Origin: Octopus bimaculoides
Taxonomy: Eukaryota
Direction: 5' to 3'
NCBI RefSeq assembly: GCF_001194135.2
Contig: NC_068991.1
Location: forward strand, 48,986,008-49,050,007
Length of the DNA: 64,000 nt
Positions 1 to 58,862 of the stretch are shown in pieces. Each line of letters starts with the position of its first letter. The first letter of the stretch is position 1. Under the pieces are notes generated by a model, which did not search any database, was not told the origin of the DNA, and saw only the letters and a program-made list of their open reading frames with translations. A program made the position numbers and the translations under genes.

Positions 1-542
1 GATGGGAAGGAGGGTGGTTATCAGAGCGTCAGTGGTGGTGGTCGCGGTGGAAGCAGAGTGGATGCTGGTATGAACTTTTATGAACGCAAGAACGCGAAGA
101 AAGAGATAGATTATAAGTGGTGTGTGTGTGTGTGTGTGTGCGTGCGTTTGTATGTGTGTGTGTGTGTGTGCGCGCGAGCGAGTGTGTGGTAGGTGGAGGG
201 GGAGGGATACAGAGAGGGAGGGGGTAGAGAGTGATTGAAAGAAAATGTGAGCTGATAGATTTATTACGAACAACAAATGCAACAACAGTCACTACTACCA
301 TCACCACTTCCTCCGCAACTACAAAACAACACCAAAAGCTGCTGCTACTACTACTACTGCTACTACTATTATTAAAACTACTATTACTACTACTGCTAGA
401 ACTACTGCTACTGCTACTGCTATGTAGAAGACGATAAAAGAAAAAGAACGATAAACATTATGCCGCTTTGGGTTGGACTTAAAAGTGAAACTGCCTGCTG
501 AGAGGCCTATGCATCCTACGCAAGATGGGCAAACCTCTTGCT

Positions 543-550
543 TATAAATA
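543..550 (+). promoter_or_regulatory. Candidate TATA box of the neuropeptide gene
   Basis: TATAAATA about 320 nt upstream of the ATG at 872. The TSS is not demonstrated. AG acceptor-like sites near 641 and 791 mean the 5' UTR could be spliced. Confidence 0.45.
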
Positions 551-871
551 CACGCGTTTCTACAACATCCAGTGTAAAAGCTGCAATACTTATCTAACAG
601 CAGCTTGCATATTGCCTTCACTACACGGTCATTTCTTTTAGAGACAAATAAAACAACAAGGGAAGAAAGCTCTATAACTAGTTTACGAACGAAATCTTAG
701 TAACTTATCGATCTACAAGTAAACCAGCAGCAACATAAAGATAACAGCAACAGCATCAGCAGAAGTTAATATTTTTATCAACTTGCCTTAGAGGAAGAAA
801 GAAGAAAGATAAAAAGACACTGACTGTTGCATGAAACGGATTTGAAATTCCCTATCCTTCAAACCAACGAA

Positions 872-940
872 ATGCATTCTTATGAAATAATTCTTAAATT
901 AAGTCTTGCCGTTTTGGCATCTTCACTGCTTGTGGAAACT
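872..940 (+). other. Predicted signal peptide
   Basis: MHSYEIILKLSLAVLASSLLVET has a hydrophobic core (LSLAVLASSLLV). The cleavage position is estimated by eye. Confidence 0.6.
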
Positions 941-1810
941 CATGACTTTAAAAGCTACTCGAATGCTGACAAAAGGTTTAGGGCGTCTGGTGATAGGATA
1001 AAAGGCCTGCTAAGAAAAAGAAATGTTAACAGTTTCATGGAAATGGAAACCCCAGAGAATTACATTCGCGAACTGGCTGCTAATCGAGGTATTGAAATTG
1101 ATTATCCTGAACATTTTGACAAGAGAATTAGAGAATTAGTCGGCAAACGATATCCTGAAAATTTTGACAAAAGAATTCGAGAATTGGTTGGCAAACGAGG
1201 AACAGAAATTGACTATCCTGATCACTTTGACAAAAGAATTAGAGAATTGGTTGGCAAACGTGGGACCGAAATAGAATATCCTGATCACTTTGACAAAAGA
1301 ATCAGAGAATTGGTTGGCAAACGAGGAAATGAAGTGGAATATTCTGACCACTTTGACAAAAGGATTAGGGAGTTGGTTGGCAAACGAGGAACAGAAGTTG
1401 AATTTCCCGACAAGAGAATTCGAGAACTGATTGGTAAACGTGGAGGTGAAATTGATTATCCTGACAAGAGAATCCGAGAATTGATCGGTAAACGAGGAGG
1501 CGAAGTTGAATATCCTGAAAATTTTGAGAAGAGAATTAGAGAATTAATTGGCAAACGAGGCACTGAAATCGAATTTCCAGAACAAGTTGACAAGAGAATT
1601 AGAGAATTAATTGGTAAAAGAGGAACCGAAGTTGAGTATCCTGAACATTTTGACAAGAGAATCAGAGAACTGGTCGGTAAACGAGGAAATGAAGCTGAAA
1701 ATCCCGAACATTTTGACAAGAGAATCAGAGAGTTGGTTGGTAAACGAAGTGTTCCATCAAATATCAGTAAAAATGTCGTTAAACGAAATGTAGAAAAATT
1801 AGAAGGTTAA
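872..1810 (+). CDS. Neuropeptide precursor (312 aa) encoding 7x IRELVamide + 4x IRELIamide; PRQFVamide/xREFVamide-family-like
   Basis: The track ORF starts at a TTG (827); the first in-frame ATG is 872. An N-terminal hydrophobic stretch is followed by 11 KR-IREL(V/I)-G-KR units (dibasic convertase sites plus amidation Gly) alternating with acidic spacers. Codons vary synonymously between units while the peptide is fixed. Confidence 0.9.
   Translation: MHSYEIILKLSLAVLASSLLVETHDFKSYSNADKRFRASGDRIKGLLRKRNVNSFMEMETPENYIRELAANRGIEIDYPEHFDKRIRELVGKRYPENFDKRIRELVGKRGTEIDYPDHFDKRIRELVGKRGTEIEYPDHFDKRIRELVGKRGNEVEYSDHFDKRIRELVGKRGTEVEFPDKRIRELIGKRGGEIDYPDKRIRELIGKRGGEVEYPENFEKRIRELIGKRGTEIEFPEQVDKRIRELIGKRGTEVEYPEHFDKRIRELVGKRGNEAENPEHFDKRIRELVGKRSVPSNISKNVVKRNVEKLEG
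1088..1747 (+). repeat. Coding tandem array, 11 units of about 45-63 bp
   Basis: Unit is spacer (GxE[IV][DE][YF]P[DE][HN]FD) + KR + IREL[VI]G + KR. Units 2, 6 and 7 have shortened spacers. Confidence 0.95.
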
Positions 1811-2355: not shown

Positions 2356-2361
2356 ATTAAA
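2356..2361 (+). other. Possible variant polyadenylation signal (ATTAAA)
   Basis: ATTAAA about 550 nt after the stop, followed by a T-rich tract. No transcript support. Confidence 0.25.
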
Positions 2362-7014: not shown

Positions 7015-9419
7015 GGTAGTAATGATGAGGAAGATGGGTGATGATACTGCCATATTTGTTATTTCTTTTCTTTATATTCTTTTGATGGTTACTGAATGAA
7101 AACTAATATATATACGTACATAAACACACACACACACACACACGCACATATATACACATATACATGTTCATATTCATTGTCTATACATAAAGAATATGTA
7201 TAGATGTACGCATATGCATAAACATATTTATATTCATATATAAATGCATATTTAACATTTACTCAAATGCATTTTATATATACATTCGTATAAATATTTA
7301 TGTGTGTGTGCTATATCTATATAATTATAAATATTTATATGTGTGTGTGCTATATCTATATAATTATAACCATGCTTACATATACAGTTATTTTTCTCTC
7401 TTTTACAACTACTTAGCGAAAATGCTTATATGTGCATGTATATGTATATATCTACATATTTATATCAATATATATATATATTCCTATATATATATATATA
7501 TATATNNNNNNNNNNNNNNNNNNNNNNNNNNNNNNNNNNNNNNNNNNNNNNNNNNNNNNNNNNNNNNNNNNNNNNNNNNNNNNNNNNNNNNNNNNNNNNN
7601 NNNNNNNNNNNNNNNNNNNNNNNNNNNNNNNNNNNNNNNNNNNNNNNNNNNNNNNNNNNNNNNNNNNNNNNNNNNNNNNNNNNNNNNNNNNNNNNNNNNN
7701 NNNNNNNNNNNNNNNNNNNNNNNNNNNNNNNNNNNNNNNNNNNNNNNNNNNNNNNNNNNNNNNNNNNNNNNNNNNNNNNNNNNNNNNNNNNNNNNNNNNN
7801 NNNNNNNNNNNNNNNNNNNNNNNNNNNNNNNNNNNNNNNNNNNNNNNNNNNNNNNNNNNNNNNNNNNNNNNNNNNNNNNNNNNNNNNNNNNNNNNNNNNN
7901 NNNNNNNNNNNNNNNNNNNNNNNNNNNNNNNNNNNNNNNNNNNNNNNNNNNNNNNNNNNNNNNNNNNNNNNNNNNNNNNNNNNNNNNNNNNNNNNNNNNN
8001 NNNNNNNNNNNNNNNNNNNNNNNNNNNNNNNNNNNNNNNNNNNNNNNNNNNNNNNNNNNNNNNNNNNNNNNNNNNNNNNNNNNNNNNNNNNNNNNNNNNN
8101 NNNNNNNNNNNNNATATATATATATATATATATATACGTATAATATGAGTGTATATAAGCGCACATGATAAATGTGTGTGTGTGTGTGTGTGTGTGTGTT
8201 TGTGGACATTTGTTTGTTCGTTGATGATGTGCTTGTGATAATTGCACGTGTTATTTATTGGCATCTTGTGTTTTCATCGCTTTGGATTTGCCCTTCATTT
8301 AGGATTCTAGTTTCGTAAGGATTAAATTTGCATAGAGATTTCTTAGTTTAATGCCGTTTTGTTGTGTATATTACACTATAGTCATATTGCGCGACTGTTC
8401 TGCACTGAAATTCTTTTTCTGGCAAGACTTAAACTTGTTTGGAGATGTATCTGTTGCATATGTGTGTGTGTAGGTGGCGGGTACGTGTATATGTTTACTG
8501 ATGTTCATGTACACTTAATTATGTAGATACCAGGATATTAAACATCATCCTTGGAGCGTGGCATCAAAGACGACAACAATTAAAAGTAACAAACGAAAGC
8601 AAAATATCACGAACAACAATAACAATTACAACAACAGTAATATCAAGAGCAAAAATATATCAATACTAACAAGAACAGGAAGATGTTCTACAGTACCACA
8701 AGGAGCATTCAGTTGTACCAACCCATGCTTCCTAAACCCAGTGGCAATCCCATAAAAAAATCAACTCTTAGACCTTTAGCAATCACCAGCACCAACAACA
8801 ACATTATCACCACCACCACCACCATAAAGTGAATCCTTTGGAACTTCGTCAGTTGAAATTAGTATTTGCAGCTGACACCATCCTACTGATAATCAAGGTG
8901 ATCCATGTGAATCTAAATCTTATTGATTTCACTTTGTCGCAGAAATCCTGAGAAATACATAAAAAAACCCGCTTCCTTCTTAGTAAACCATAAAGGAAAT
9001 ATCTTGCACATTAAAAGGTGATTTTCTTAGTAAATTAATCGTGTTTATCAATCGTTGAAACTATAAATATACCACTGAATGGCAAAACTGTCTCATGGTA
9101 CGAATGCTCCGACTGAATAAAGTAAGCAATATTTCAATTTCCTTTCTTGTAAACGTCATTTTCAGACGTTTTAAATATTTCAGTATTTTTATTTTTATTT
9201 CGTGTTTCATGTGCTCGATTGAGGACAATGTTGTTCGTATTAGGTATGATCACTGTTTTGTCTTGGTTTTGCATTTTTATTATAATGACTGTATTTACAT
9301 AATATGAACCTACGAGAATTATTTTCTATAATACGATCACATTTGTAAGGTTTTAGCTGTTGCTTTGTCCGAATGATCTTCAGTCATAAGCAGCAAAACA
9401 TCTATCTAAATGGGGATAT

Positions 9420-25378: not shown

Positions 25379-26569
25379 NNNNNNNNNNNNNNNNNNNNNN
25401 NNNNNNNNNNNNNNNNNNNNNNNNNNNNNNNNNNNNNNNNNNNNNNNNNNNNNNNNNNNNNNNNNNNNNNNNNNNNNNNNNNNNNNNNNNNNNNNNNNNN
25501 NNNNNNNNNNNNNNNNNNNNNNNNNNNNNNNNNNNNNNNNNNNNNNNNNNNNNNNNNNNNNNNNNNNNNNNNNNNNNNNNNNNNNNNNNNNNNNNNNNNN
25601 NNNNNNNNNNNNNNNNNNNNNNNNNNNNNNNNNNNNNNNNNNNNNNNNNNNNNNNNNNNNNNNNNNNNNNNNNNNNNNNNNNNNNNNNNNNNNNNNNNNN
25701 NNNNNNNNNNNNNNNNNNNNNNNNNNNNNNNNNNNNNNNNNNNNNNNNNNNNNNNNNNNNNNNNNNNNNNNNNNNNNNNNNNNNNNNNNNNNNNNNNNNN
25801 NNNNNNNNNNNNNNNNNNNNNNNNNNNNNNNNNNNNNNNNNNNNNNNNNNNNNNNNNNNNNNNNNNNNNNNNNNNNNNNNNNNNNNNNNNNNNNNNNNNN
25901 NNNNNNNNNNNNNNNNNNNNNNNNNNNNNNNNNNNNNNNNNNNNNNNNNNNNNNNNNNNNNNNNNNNNNNNNNNNNNNNNNNNNNNNNNNNNNNNNNNNN
26001 NNNNNNNNNNNNNNNNNNNNNNNNNNNNNNNNNNNNNNNNNNNNNNNNNNNNNNNNNNNNNNNNNNNNNNNNNNNNNNNNNNNNNNNNNNNNNNNNNNNN
26101 NNNNNNNNNNNNNNNNNNNNNNNNNNNNNNNNNNNNNNNNNNNNNNNGGGGTTGGGGGGCATCTTTGTATGGCAAAAGTTTTGAAAGCTCTATTTTATAC
26201 ACCCCCGCTCTCATCATCCCACTCCGGACCTACTTGGGCCAATTTTTGTTTTGCACTTCAAAACCATGGGATGAGCATTTTCGGCAAAAAAGTTGGAAAA
26301 TTTTGTTAATATTTTCGGAGGGAAACGTGATTTAAGGGTGATTTAGTTGTTGCTTCTTGCACATCCAAAGAAAACCCTCCTCGTTTCTTTATCACTCGCA
26401 TGTATTGATGGTTTTCAATGTTTTCCCCTATAAATACATTTATATGCTATAAAAAAGAAAATTTGAGAAATTATGAATTTTTTTGCACCCCCACTCCCTG
26501 CCCCTGATTGTTTGTGTAGAAATTAAAATACTGGAGACACTGAGAAGGTCATTGACGACATTTATCCAC

Positions 26570-52978: not shown

Positions 52979-53640
52979 NNNNNNNNNNNNNNNNNNNNNN
53001 NNNNNNNNNNNNNNNNNNNNNNNNNNNNNNNNNNNNNNNNNNNNNNNNNNNNNNNNNNNNNNNNNNNNNNNNNNNNNNNNNNNNNNNNNNNNNNNNNNNN
53101 NNNNNNNNNNNNNNNNNNNNNNNNNNNNNNNNNNNNNNNNNNNNNNNNNNNNNNNNNNNNNNNNNNNNNNNNNNNNNNNNNNNNNNNNNNNNNNNNNNNN
53201 NNNNNNNNNNNNNNNNNNNNNNNNNNNNNNNNNNNNNNNNNNNNNNNNNNNNNNNNNNNNNNNNNNNNNNNNNNNNNNNNNNNNNNNNNNNNNNNNNNNN
53301 NNNNNNNNNNNNNNNNNNNNNNNNNNNNNNNNNNNNNNNNNNNNNNNNNNNNNNNNNNNNNNNNNNNNNNNNNNNNNNNNNNNNNNNNNNNNNNNNNNNN
53401 NNNNNNNNNNNNNNNNNNNNNNNNNNNNNNNNNNNNNNNNNNNNNNNNNNNNNNNNNNNNNNNNNNNNNNNNNNNNNNNNNNNNNNNNNNNNNNNNNNNN
53501 NNNNNNNNNNNNNNNNNNNNNNNNNNNNNNNNNNNNNNNNNNNNNNNNNNNNNNNNNNNNNNNNNNNNNNNNNNNNNNNNNNNNNNNNNNNNNNNNNNNN
53601 NNNNNNNNNNNNNNNNNNNNNNNNNNNNNNNNNNNTATAT

Positions 53641-57103: not shown

Positions 57104-58862
57104 TTATTCTTGAATCAACAACATCTCTTATATTTTCTGATCAAACATACATCATCAATTCTACTAAATATGTTTCTCAATTAATTAGATACCTATTAGA
57201 TCCATAGCTTATATCTTTAACTGTTGACGCTATATAAATATAAAATAATATGCCTCAATTTTGATAACATTCCCTTAAATATATATTTTTTCTCCATACC
57301 CACTATTTATTTATTTACAAATTTTCTCTACTAAAGTACCTTATCGTATATTTCCTTTTTTCGCTAATTTTAAATCTAAGTATAAACCCAGTGCATACAT
57401 TAGATAGTCCCAATGTATTTTAGTAATCTATTGACAATAACACTTAAATATTAATATAGATGATATATACTCACATATATGAGTCTATACATAAATATAT
57501 TCAAATAGATACTTCCGAGCAAATATGTTTTGGTATGTGCATCCAAAAGTGTGAATACATTAATTTGAATATATATATATATATATTGTCATTACACCCC
57601 ATATTGCTACTCATCATTACTTTTCCACAACTGTATCTATGAACAAACCAATAGAAAAAAATCTATTTATTTTTATAAAACCGTTGTATAATAATCCTTA
57701 TCTTCTCACCTATCATTCATTTATTTACTATATTAGTTTTAGTCTCCCTCACATTCTAAAGTGTTATTTTTCTTCTCCTTTCAAGTGATTATTTATTTAT
57801 ATCTTATTGCATATATATTTTCGTTTTTTTTTTCGAAGCAATATATTTTTTACTATATGTATCTTACATACACACNNNNNNNNNNNNNNNNNNNNNNNNN
57901 NNNNNNNNNNNNNNNNNNNNNNNNNNNNNNNNNNNNNNNNNNNNNNNNNNNNNNNNNNNNNNNNNNNNNNNNNNNNNNNNNNNNNNNNNNNNNNNNNNNN
58001 NNNNNNNNNNNNNNNNNNNNNNNNNNNNNNNNNNNNNNNNNNNNNNNNNNNNNNNNNNNNNNNNNNNNNNNNNNNNNNNNNNNNNNNNNNNNNNNNNNNN
58101 NNNNNNNNNNNNNNNNNNNNNNNNNNNNNNNNNNNNNNNNNNNNNNNNNNNNNNNNNNNNNNNNNNNNNNNNNNNNNNNNNNNNNNNNNNNNNNNNNNNN
58201 NNNNNNNNNNNNNNNNNNNNNNNNNNNNNNNNNNNNNNNNNNNNNNNNNNNNNNNNNNNNNNNNNNNNNNNNNNNNNNNNNNNNNNNNNNNNNNNNNNNN
58301 NNNNNNNNNNNNNNNNNNNNNNNNNNNNNNNNNNNNNNNNNNNNNNNNNNNNNNNNNNNNNNNNNNNNNNNNNNNNNNNNNNNNNNNNNNNNNNNNNNNN
58401 NNNNNNNNNNNNNNNNNNNNNNNNNNNNNNNNNNNNNNNNNNNNNNNNNNNNNNNNNNNNNNNNNNNNNNNNNNNNNNNNNNNNNNNNNNNNNNNNNNNN
58501 NNNNNNNNNNNNNNNNNNNNNNNNNNNNNNNNNNNNNNNNNNNNNNNNNNNNNNNNNNNNNNNNNNNNNNNNNNNNNNNNNNNNNNNNNNNNNNNNNNNN
58601 NNNNNNNNNNNNNNNNNNNNNNNNNNNNNNNNNNNNNNNNNNNNNNNNNNNNNNNNNNNNNNNNNNNNNNNNNNNNNNNNNNNNNNNNNNNNNNNNNNNN
58701 NNNNNNNNNNNNNNNNNNNNNNNNNNNNNNNNNNNNNNNNNNNNNNNNNNNNNNNGCTACAATTTATTTGTATTGTAATGTTTTAAAAAGAAATTTTTAA
58801 ACATTTTTAAACATACTAATAAATTTTTTATACATTCAATTCTCTCCATTTTCTTTCCTTCA

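What the first reader, a model, noticed from the sequence alone, without database searches (positions are those of the whole stretch)
872..1810. Precursor of an unusual IREL(V/I)amide pentapeptide family
Seen: signal peptide plus 11 KR-IREL(V/I)G-KR units. Codons vary freely between copies (ATT/ATC, AGA/CGA/AGG, TTA/TTG/CTG, GGC/GGT) but the only amino-acid change is V/I, which points to purifying selection on a secreted amidated pentapeptide. Known: Aplysia PRQFVamide-family pentapeptides have the form xRxFVamide. Inference: this is either a divergent cephalopod member with Leu replacing the family-defining Phe, or a separate family. I cannot tell whether it has been described.
Basis: partly seen in the sequence, partly recalled or inferred. 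Interest (0 to 1): 0.7.

Follow-up and report, generated by a model that had tools for sequence, protein, structure and literature searches.

The report
Octopus IRELVamide (PRQFVamide-type) neuropeptide precursor
This is a real, intact octopus gene for a secreted precursor that should yield 11 copies of the tiny amidated peptides IRELV-NH2 and IRELI-NH2, but it is a divergent member of the known molluscan PRQFVamide family and has already been reported for this same species.

Summary
Window 872-1810 (+) is one 312-aa open frame with a hydrophobic N-terminus and 11 KR-IREL[V/I]-G-KR units (7 V, 4 I). Synonymous codons vary freely. Core pN/pS is 0.04, against 0.35 in the spacers.

The protein is letter-for-letter Octopus bimaculoides gene model Ocbimv22004644 in the supplementary data of De Oliveira et al. 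2019. That data also holds a 96% identical O. vulgaris entry with all 11 cores unchanged. A 2023 O. bimaculoides preprint supplement already names it "IRELVamide/PRQFVamide-like".

A search of 1.84 billion representative proteins gave best hits that are almost all x-R-[E/D/Q]-F-[V/I/L]-amide pentapeptide precursors. These include a Bulinus precursor carrying PRQFV, IREFV, VRDFV and LREFV units. Several bivalve-type precursors carry exact IRELV and IRELI units beside Phe-containing ones, so Leu at position 4 is a minor natural variant that became fixed here.

The novelty is gone. Still untested are the amidated peptides themselves, the receptor and the function.

Side finding: the octopus PMEFLamide gene on another chromosome looks like fulicin and lies next to a giant MIP-type exon.

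The parts
542..553 (+). Candidate TATA box, TTATAAATACAC, 330 nt upstream of the start codon (low confidence)
   Evidence: The 12-mer occurs once in the 64-kb window. The same 12-mer lies 208 nt upstream of the ATG of the orthologue on L003 (753-764). The local alignment score is not above shuffled controls.
831..845 (+). The only upstream ATG between the TATA-like site and the start codon; out of frame, a 4-codon mini-ORF (ATG AAA CGG ATT TGA)
872..1810 (+). Complete coding sequence of the IRELV/Iamide preproprecursor, 312 aa plus TAA stop, on a single coding exon. Identical to O. bimaculoides gene model Ocbimv22004644.
   Evidence: String identity to the sequence in the supplement of PMC6425005. 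The O. vulgaris entry has the same N-terminus.
872..940 (+). Predicted signal peptide, MHSYEIILKLSLAVLASSLLVET. The cleavage site is not determined; after ASS or VET are both possible.
   Evidence: Hydrophobic core at residues 5-20. The N-terminus is conserved in the L003 orthologue as MHPFEIVLHFSILALAST.
941..1120 (+). N-terminal pro-region (aa 24-83) with two further dibasic sites (KR 34-35, RKR 48-50)
1058..1087 (+). Decayed 12th unit, NYIRELAANR. It aligns with KRIRELVGKR but has lost both cleavage sites and the amidation Gly.
   Evidence: It is kept unchanged in O. vulgaris.
1121..1150 (+). Unit 1, KR-IRELV-G-KR
1169..1198 (+). Unit 2, KR-IRELV-G-KR
1232..1261 (+). Unit 3, KR-IRELV-G-KR
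1295..1324 (+). Unit 4, KR-IRELV-G-KR
1358..1387 (+). Unit 5, KR-IRELV-G-KR
1412..1441 (+). Unit 6, KR-IRELI-G-KR
1466..1495 (+). Unit 7, KR-IRELI-G-KR
1529..1558 (+). Unit 8, KR-IRELI-G-KR
1592..1621 (+). Unit 9, KR-IRELI-G-KR
1655..1684 (+). Unit 10, KR-IRELV-G-KR
1718..1747 (+). Unit 11, KR-IRELV-G-KR
1748..1807 (+). C-terminal tail, SVPSNISKNVV-KR-NVEKLEG. The final KR-NVEKLEG may be a decayed terminal unit: the L003 orthologue ends KR-VRELVG and bivalve-type precursors end ...FVGK or IRELLG.
   Evidence: The reading as a decayed unit is inference.
2356..2361 (+). Nearest canonical-type poly(A) signal (ATTAAA), about 550 nt after the stop (weak; an assembly gap starts at 2437)

Best explanation
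The window holds the Octopus bimaculoides gene for a classical multi-copy neuropeptide preprohormone. It is the coleoid-cephalopod representative of the molluscan/lophotrochozoan PRQFVamide family, x-R-[E/D/Q]-F-[V/I/L]-NH2.

Shown here: an intact single-exon 312-aa frame, an N-terminal hydrophobic leader, 11 units KR-IREL[V/I]-G-KR separated by acidic spacers, strong purifying selection on the units only, conservation in O. vulgaris, and best similarity to PRQFVamide-type precursors.

Inferred from established prohormone processing: the leader is removed in the ER. Prohormone convertases cut after each KR. A carboxypeptidase E-type enzyme trims the basic residues. Peptidylglycine alpha-amidating monooxygenase (PAM) converts the exposed Gly into a C-terminal amide. 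One precursor would then give 7 IRELV-NH2 ([M+H]+ 628.414) and 4 IRELI-NH2 ([M+H]+ 642.430), plus acidic spacer peptides.

Inferred from the family and from published octopus expression data: the peptides are released by central neurons and act on an as yet unidentified receptor, probably a GPCR, as neuromodulators. In Aplysia the family peptide inhibits gut contraction and feeding-circuit neurons.

The Phe-to-Leu change at position 4 was already present as a minor isoform in bivalve-type precursors. In this lineage it has taken over every copy.
For: Anatomy and selection
- Searches give the units and the core pN/pS of 0.04 against 0.35 in the spacers.

Conservation
- The O. vulgaris orthologue is 96% identical, with all 11 cores and their V/I order unchanged.
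- An unidentified, more distant species has an all-Leu4 orthologue with IRELV x4, IRELI x2, IRELL and VRELV, and a recognisably homologous leader peptide.

Family
- phmmer against 1.84e9 representatives gave 58 hits. The best are xR[EDQ]F[VIL]-G precursors, with E-values from 2.5e-40 down.
- The Bulinus hit carries PRQFV x7 together with IREFV, VREFV, LREFV and VRDFV.
- Aplysia PRQFV-amide protein is recorded as containing IREFV-amide, one residue from IRELV (header quoted).
- In 297 pentapeptide units from 27 non-cephalopod family precursors, position 2 is R in 295, position 3 is E/D/Q in 297, and position 4 is F in 283 and L in 13. The L units include exact IRELV and IRELI.
- A bivalve-type precursor searched against the whole octopus genome hits this gene best: 2.9e-20 against 2.7e-6 for the PMEFL gene.

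Transcription
- A partial cDNA-derived sequence of this gene was recovered from O. bimaculoides optic-gland transcriptomes.
- An O. vulgaris orthologue, entry octopusVulgaris.12157, is in the supplement of PMC6425005.
Against: - No peptide-level evidence was available. Amidated IRELV/IRELI has not been shown by mass spectrometry in any source I could read.
- Phe4, the residue that gives the family its name pattern, is absent from all 11 units.
- E-values between repetitive KR...GKR precursors are inflated by the repeats.
- The gastropod (Bulinus) PRQFVamide precursor searched against the octopus genome hits the PMEFL locus marginally better (3.7e-10) than this gene (8.7e-9, split into several pieces). 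The reciprocal-best-hit test is therefore clear only from the bivalve side.
- No receptor for this family is known to me, so the mode of action is by analogy.
- Pfam has no model for the family.
Confidence: 0.85

Rival explanations
1. A separate, cephalopod-specific peptide family that only resembles PRQFVamide because all short amidated-peptide precursors share KR...G-KR punctuation.
For: Phe4 is missing in 11 of 11 units. Outside the units there is no alignable similarity to non-cephalopod precursors. The reciprocal search from a gastropod precursor is ambiguous.
Against: Four of the five peptide positions fall on the commonest or second-commonest family residue. Exact IRELV and IRELI occur inside Phe-type precursors of bivalve type. 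The ranked hit list is dominated by one motif class, not by arbitrary KR/GKR precursors.
Confidence: 0.06
2. A member of a neighbouring family instead. One candidate is fulicin/EFLGamide (protostome TRH-type, core E-[L/F]-[L/F/V]). The other is LRNFVamide/FLamide, since the scallop LRNFVamide precursor begins with SRELVamide.
For: SRELVamide is listed under LRNFVamide in the scallop (P0065 and P0067). IRELV fits the E-[L/F]-[L/F/V] core quoted for fulicin/TRH-like peptides, and C. elegans TRH-like peptides are (G/A)(R/N)ELFamide (PMC8398477). Cross-hits between these families exist.
Against: Fulicin-type precursors hit this protein only at 1.7e-5 (P0023). An xRYFV-type precursor hits at 4e-9 (P0116). 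PRQFVamide-type precursors hit at 1e-20 to 1e-40. The octopus genome already has a better fulicin candidate, the PMEFL gene, which lies next to a MIP exon. No MIP-like units exist in this window.
Confidence: 0.06
3. The frame is not processed as predicted. The gene may be non-functional or decaying, or the active products may be the acidic spacers or longer forms rather than the pentapeptides.
For: One internal unit and perhaps the terminal unit have decayed. The spacers keep a loose G-x-E-[IV]-[DE]-[YF]-P-[DE]-[HN]-F-[DE] pattern with pN/pS 0.35. No mass-spectrometry data exist.
Against: Constraint on the cores and their cleavage and amidation signals is about ten times stronger than on the spacers. 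The frame is intact in two Octopus species. The gene is transcribed.
Confidence: 0.03

Closest known systems
'IRELVamide/PRQFVamide-like' prepropeptide of Octopus bimaculoides (supplement of bioRxiv 10.1101/2023.11.27.568875) and gene model Ocbimv22004644 / octopusVulgaris.12157 (supplementary datasets of De Oliveira et al. 2019, PMC6425005)
   Same: It is the same gene. The window protein is identical to Ocbimv22004644. The preprint's partial sequence carries the same units and the same C-terminal tail and gives the same interpretation, a possible octopus variant of PRQFVamide.
   Different: The preprint sequence is partial, lacks the signal peptide, and has repeats out of genomic order. The window gives the full single-exon locus. 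Neither source reports mass spectrometry, a receptor or a function for this peptide.
Aplysia californica PRQFVamide precursor (Furukawa et al. 2003; UniProt PRQFV_APLCA, header quoted) and gastropod homologues such as Bulinus Btru_069890 (P0002)
   Same: A secreted multi-copy precursor of KR-flanked, Gly-amidated pentapeptides with Arg2, Q/D/E at position 3 and Val5. The Aplysia precursor also encodes IREFV-amide. The phmmer E-value to the Bulinus precursor is 9e-31.
   Different: All octopus units have Leu4 instead of Phe4. The octopus has no PRQFV unit. It has 11 units of only two kinds, against a more varied set of units in the Bulinus precursor.
Bivalve-type xR[DE]FVamide precursors (P0006-P0014, including Sinanodonta and Potamilus proteins)
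   Same: They contain exact IRELV-G and IRELI-G units, plus QRELV, PRELV and IRELL, in the same kind of precursor. Searched against the octopus genome, P0006 hits this gene best.
   Different: In these precursors the Leu4 units are a minority, 1-3 per precursor, among Phe4 units. In octopus they are the only kind.
Fulicin / EFLGamide (protostome TRH-type) family, represented in octopus by the PMEFLamide gene on G000:C15
   Same: Short amidated peptides with Glu at position 3 and an aliphatic C-terminus. The precursors cross-hit weakly.
   Different: This family has no Arg2 and has Phe4. The PMEFL gene's best hits are fulicin precursors with FNEFV and PYEFL units. It lies beside a giant MIP (PxFVamide) exon, as in the oyster MIP/fulicin gene. 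The window gene has none of this.
LRNFVamide family (scallop precursor with SRELVamide, LRHFIamide and xRYFLamide units)
   Same: Arg2 and an aliphatic amide. One scallop peptide is SRELVamide.
   Different: Most of its units are xR[YF]FL with an aromatic residue at position 3. Precursor similarity to the window protein is much weaker.

Membership tests
PRQFVamide family | Secreted precursor: N-terminal signal peptide followed by many peptide copies | tested here: met
   Hydrophobic core at residues 5-20 and 11 copies. The sequence sits in a dataset whose pipeline selected secreted, repetitive precursors. SignalP itself was not run.
PRQFVamide family | Pentapeptide units flanked by dibasic KR sites and followed by Gly as amide donor | tested here: met
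   11 of 11 units are KR-xxxxx-G-KR.
PRQFVamide family | Arg at peptide position 2 | tested here: met
   11 of 11 here. The family has R in 295 of 297 units.
PRQFVamide family | Gln, Asp or Glu at position 3 | tested here: met
   Glu in 11 of 11 here. The family has E 147, D 106 and Q 44 of 297.
PRQFVamide family | Phe at position 4 | tested here: not met
   Leu in 11 of 11. Phe4 is not invariant in the family: 13 of 297 units in non-cephalopod precursors have Leu4, including exact IRELV and IRELI. I therefore treat Phe4 as the predominant residue, not a strict criterion, and file the gene as a divergent member.
PRQFVamide family | Aliphatic C-terminal residue (Val most often, then Ile or Leu) carrying the amide | tested here: met
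   Val in 7 units and Ile in 4. The family has V 237, I 33 and L 13 of 297. Amidation itself is predicted, not observed.
PRQFVamide family | Precursor-level homology: best hits are family members, and the reverse search returns this gene | tested here: inconclusive
   The forward search is clear. The reverse search from a bivalve-type precursor returns this gene best. The reverse search from the Bulinus precursor puts the PMEFL locus marginally first. Scores are repeat-driven.
PRQFVamide family | Mature amidated peptides present in nervous tissue, with bioactivity on gut or feeding circuits via a cognate receptor | not testable with these tools
   This needs LC-MS/MS, physiology and receptor assays. 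The Sepia neuropeptidome paper is not held.
Fulicin / EFLGamide (TRH-type) family | Units of type x-[N/Y/S]-[E/D]-F-[V/L]-amide without Arg2, and genomic linkage to a MIP (PxFVamide) exon as in oyster | tested here: not met
   Arg2 and Leu4 occur in all units. There are no PxFV-type units anywhere in the 64-kb window. The octopus PMEFL gene on C15 meets these features instead.
LRNFVamide / FLamide family | Units mostly x-R-[N/Y/H/F]-F-[V/L/I]-amide, with an aromatic or Asn/His residue at position 3 | tested here: not met
   Position 3 is Glu in all units. Scallop-type precursors (P0065, P0067) are not among the hits of the window protein at E <= 1e-3, although one of their peptides is SRELVamide.

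The most novel reading that the evidence does not exclude
The window gene, not the PMEFLamide gene, may be the true and only PRQFVamide-family orthologue in coleoid cephalopods. Its ligand has completely switched Phe4 to Leu4, which implies a co-evolved receptor pocket. A secondary source reports that the Sepia PRQFVamide prohormones yield peptides such as PMEFLamide. The octopus cell atlases use two prqfv-named markers that I could not map to genes. The PMEFLamide gene would then really be the fulicin/EFLGamide (TRH-type) half of a conserved MIP-fulicin locus. If so, published 'prqfv1/prqfv2' marker names conflate two different signalling systems.
Probability: 0.45. Interest if true: 0.35.

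Novelty: already known. Interest (0 to 1): 0.18.

Why it matters
Small amidated peptides are major neuromodulators in cephalopod brains, and PRQFV-named genes are already used as cell-type markers in octopus optic-lobe and brain atlases. Knowing which gene makes which peptide matters for three tasks: interpreting those atlases, mass-spectrometric peptide identification, and pairing ligands with orphan GPCRs. Two peptide sets are involved: IRELV/I-NH2 here and PMEFL-NH2 on another chromosome.

The complete Phe-to-Leu replacement is a tidy example of a minor isoform taking over a multi-copy precursor. It gives a concrete ligand pair (IREFVa versus IRELVa) for studying ligand-receptor co-evolution. 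As a discovery, however, the gene and the predicted peptide are already on record.

Tried and rejected
- Pfam scan of the precursor and four homologues: only sub-threshold noise. No family model exists.
- Full-text search for IRELV, IRELVamide and similar strings in 8.4 million papers: only OCR noise and one scallop SRELVamide. The relevant records sat in supplements.
- The O. vulgaris 'Ov-PRQFV' qPCR primers (PMC5736919) match neither the window nor the PMEFL locus at up to 3 mismatches. Which gene that study measured is unresolved.
- Mapping prqfv1/prqfv2 (Songco-Casey 2022) and prqfva1/prqfva2 (Styfhals 2022) to the two loci failed. No sequences or usable gene identifiers are held.
- The Sepia neuropeptidome paper (Zatylny-Gaudin 2016) is not held. 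Its content is known only second-hand.
- Promoter conservation: a shared 12-mer, TTATAAATACAC, lies upstream of both orthologues, but the alignment score is within shuffled controls. The bacterial promoter/terminator scan is irrelevant for this genome.
- The species of the second all-Leu4 orthologue (Logan runs ERR12921336 and ERR12921338) could not be identified.
- The exact window protein is not in the protein collection.
- The antisense open frames over the repeat array (e.g. 1136-1543, minus strand) are by-products of the repeat and were rejected as genes.
- No tRNA or Rfam family was found in the window.
Full report
**1. What is in the sequence**

Window 872-1810 on the + strand is a single open frame of 312 codons plus TAA under the standard code. 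It begins MHSYEIILKLSLAVLASSLLVET. Residues 5-20 form a hydrophobic core, with an 11-residue Kyte-Doolittle mean above 2. A pattern scan finds exactly 11 units KR-IREL[V/I]-G-KR, 7 with Val and 4 with Ile. Acidic spacers of 6-11 residues separate them, typically G-x-E-[IV]-[DE]-[YF]-P-[DE]-[HN]-F-[DE]. Tandem Repeats Finder sees a 63-bp period with 9.8 copies and 78% matches.

Two further features were not in the finding. One is a decayed unit at aa 63-72 (NYIRELAANR), which has lost both dibasic sites and the Gly. The other is a C-terminal KR-NVEKLEG-stop, which may be a decayed terminal unit, because the orthologue on L003 ends KR-VRELVG.

The only upstream ATG between a TATA-like TTATAAATACAC (542-553) and the start codon is an out-of-frame 4-codon mini-ORF at 831. 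The rest of the 64-kb window holds microsatellites and assembly gaps. It has no other credible coding frame, no tRNA and no Rfam family.

**2. Is it more than chance, and is it under selection?**

Of 12 dibasic-x(3-8)-Gly-dibasic motifs in all six frames of the window, 11 are these units. Codon use differs between units at nine of the ten core codons. The only amino-acid change is V/I. Over the 55 unit pairs, pS is 0.62 and pN is 0.024, giving pN/pS 0.04. The seven 11-codon spacers give 0.35.

The O. vulgaris orthologue in the supplement of De Oliveira et al. 2019 is 96% identical. All 11 cores and their V/I order are unchanged. The 9 substitutions and one 3-residue deletion lie in the leader-proximal region, the spacers and the tail. 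The observation and the inference of purifying selection on the pentapeptide, its cleavage sites and its amidation signal are therefore confirmed.

**3. Whose gene is it?**

The window is G000:C11:48986008-49050007 of a 2.34-Gb assembly. The protein is letter-for-letter 'octopusBimaculoides.Ocbimv22004644' in Supplementary Datasets S2/S3 of PMC6425005. The organism is therefore Octopus bimaculoides, and the gene model dates from the original genome annotation. Because that gene model equals the genomic ORF and the O. vulgaris entry shares the same N-terminus, the coding sequence lies on one exon.

**4. What family?**

Two searches were run with the window protein:
- a word-seeded search of 5.8 billion proteins;
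- an exhaustive phmmer search of 1.84 billion cluster representatives, which gave 58 hits.

Extracting the KR...G-KR units from the hits shows that the top 25 or so are overwhelmingly precursors of x-R-[E/D/Q]-F-[V/I/L]-amide pentapeptides. Examples are:
- Bulinus truncatus Btru_069890 (PRQFV x7, LREFV, VREFV, IREFV, VRDFV);
- a precursor with 13 IREFV units;
- a group of about 260-aa precursors mixing AREFV, LRDFV, QRDFV and MRDFV with exact IRELV and IRELI units;
- unionid mussel proteins (Sinanodonta, Potamilus) with QRELV or PRELV and a terminal IRELL.

The Aplysia PRQFV-amide protein is recorded as containing AREFV-, PRQFV-, VRDFV-, VREFV- and IREFV-amide (header quoted). Octopus IRELV differs from a bona fide Aplysia family peptide by one residue.

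Position-specific counts were made over 297 units from 27 non-cephalopod precursors:

| Position | Family residues (of 297) | Octopus residue |
|---|---|---|
| 1 | Ile is the second commonest | Ile |
| 2 | R 295 | Arg |
| 3 | E 147, D 106, Q 44 | Glu |
| 4 | F 283, L 13 | Leu |
| 5 | V 237, I 33, L 13 | Val or Ile |

Every octopus position lies inside the family's natural range. Leu4 is a rare but real isoform that has become the only one here.

One other source has an all-Leu4 precursor (IRELV x4, IRELI x2, IRELL, VRELV). It comes from two Logan assemblies of unidentified species. Its leader, MHPFEIVLHFSILALAST, is recognisably homologous to the octopus leader, while its spacers are not conserved. 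It is probably a more distant cephalopod, but I could not name it.

**5. Limits of the homology argument**

Scores between repetitive precursors are inflated by the repeats. Reverse searches against the whole octopus genome gave two results. A bivalve-type precursor (P0006) hits this gene at 2.9e-20 and the next locus at 2.7e-6. The Bulinus PRQFVamide precursor hits a second locus on C15 at 3.7e-10 and this gene at 8.7e-9, in several pieces. Reciprocity is therefore clear from bivalves and ambiguous from gastropods.

Neighbouring families score much lower against the window protein. An xRYFV-type precursor scores 4e-9 and a fulicin-type precursor scores 1.7e-5. Pfam has no model for any of these.

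**6. The second locus**

G000:C15:4145677-4146498 (minus strand) encodes 16-17 [P/R/S/G]MEFL-G-KR units. A secondary source says that incomplete PRQFV-amide prohormones were identified in the Sepia officinalis neuropeptidome and that related mature peptides such as PMEFLamide are present in hemolymph (PMC5736919).

Its best hits, however, include fulicin precursors with FNEFV, PYEFV and PYEFL units, at E 2.6e-39. They also include named fulicin of Deroceras and Lissachatina, and Platynereis and Urechis FLamide. One Plakobranchus 'prqfv-amide' protein is also near the top.

Within 1.7 kb downstream on the same strand begins a frame of at least 1,490 aa, still open at the edge of the fetched DNA. 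It holds at least 97 (E)DP[M/F/V/L]F[V/I]-G-KR units, which are Mytilus-inhibitory-peptide (PxFVamide) type. In the Pacific oyster, MIP and fulicin are alternative splice products of one gene, as in the Capitella EFLGamide gene, and fulicin/EFLGamide is regarded as the protostome TRH-type peptide (PMC8398477).

I therefore infer that PMEFLamide is the cephalopod fulicin-type peptide and that the window gene is the better PRQFVamide orthologue. This is a side result and rests on similarity plus adjacency only.

**7. Is it already known?**

Yes.
- The gene model and the O. vulgaris orthologue are in the 2019 dataset.
- The supplement of bioRxiv 10.1101/2023.11.27.568875 (O. bimaculoides peduncle complex) prints a partial prepropeptide headed 'IRELVamide/PRQFVamide-like'. 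It was predicted from optic-gland transcriptomes. [quoted passage not shown]
- That supplement lists no PMEFL sequence. The 'PRQFVamide' homologue named in that preprint, and probably the one in Wang & Ragsdale 2018, is therefore likely this gene. The 2018 study found it enriched in optic-gland samples of unmated females and lower in brooding ones. This link is my inference.
- Two PRQFV-named genes are used as markers in octopus atlases. prqfv1 and prqfv2 label non-overlapping dopaminergic amacrine sublayers and sparse medulla neurons in the O. bimaculoides optic lobe. prqfva1 and prqfva2 are used in O. vulgaris paralarval brain. Which name belongs to which locus could not be resolved here.
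- None of these sources, as far as I could read, reports mass-spectrometric detection, a receptor or a physiological action for IRELVamide.

**8. How it most likely works**

Shown here are an intact secretory-type precursor with conserved processing punctuation, and its transcription.

Inferred from the general prohormone pathway: signal peptidase acts first. Prohormone convertases then cleave after KR, and carboxypeptidase trims the basic residues. PAM then amidates the peptide using the Gly. The products are 7 IRELV-NH2 ([M+H]+ 628.414), 4 IRELI-NH2 ([M+H]+ 642.430) and acidic spacer peptides.

Inferred by analogy with Aplysia PRQFVamide, as summarised: neuromodulatory, probably inhibitory, action on visceral muscle and feeding circuitry through an unidentified receptor.

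**9. Verdict**

The gene and the predicted peptide are already on record for this very species, so novelty is 'already known' and interest is low. What remains open is experimental (peptide detection, receptor, function) and nomenclatural (PRQFVamide versus fulicin assignment of the two octopus genes).

Noticed in passing
G000:C15:4145677-4146498 (minus strand; L002 1399-2220): A second octopus locus, on another chromosome, encodes 16-17 [P/R/S/G]MEFL-G-KR units (PMEFLamide). Its best database hits include fulicin precursors (FNEFV, PYEFL), so it looks like the fulicin/EFLGamide (TRH-type) family. A secondary source (PMC5736919) links PMEFLamide to the Sepia 'PRQFVamide' prohormones. The ORF start and end look like intron read-through, so the gene model is incomplete.
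   Followed up: partly
G000:C15:4139529-4143998 or beyond (minus strand; L010, L017): A giant open frame of at least 1,490 aa, still open at the edge of the fetched DNA, holds at least 97 (E)DP[M/F/V/L]F[V/I]-G-KR units of Mytilus-inhibitory-peptide/PxFVamide type. It starts within 1.7 kb downstream of the PMEFL exon on the same strand. This mirrors the oyster single MIP/fulicin gene with alternative splicing (PMC8398477).
   Followed up: partly
window 1058-1087 and 1781-1807: A decayed internal unit (NYIRELAANR) and a possible decayed terminal unit (KR-NVEKLEG-stop). The internal unit is identical in O. vulgaris; the terminal one is NVEKVEG there.
   Followed up: partly
window 542-553; L003 753-764: An identical 12-mer, TTATAAATACAC, lies upstream of the start codon in both the octopus gene and the unidentified all-Leu4 orthologue. 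It is unique in the 64-kb window but not significant against shuffled alignments. It is a candidate TATA box.
   Followed up: yes
window 1136-1543 (minus strand) and other antisense frames over the array: Long stop-free antisense frames overlap the repeat array. They repeat with the same period and are a by-product of the repeated codons, not evidence of a gene.
   Followed up: yes
window, whole length (e.g. 119-178, 2437-2774, 7500-8100, 25400-26100, 52980-53640, 57880-58750): The other 63 kb has about 30-38% GC and is dense in (TG)n, (TA)n and (TATG)n-type microsatellites and runs of N (assembly gaps). It has no other credible coding frame, tRNA or Rfam match.
   Followed up: partly
PMC5736919 primer table (Ov-PRQFV): The published O. 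vulgaris 'PRQFV' qPCR primers match neither the IRELV gene window nor the PMEFL locus at up to 3 mismatches. It is unclear which transcript that study quantified.
   Followed up: partly
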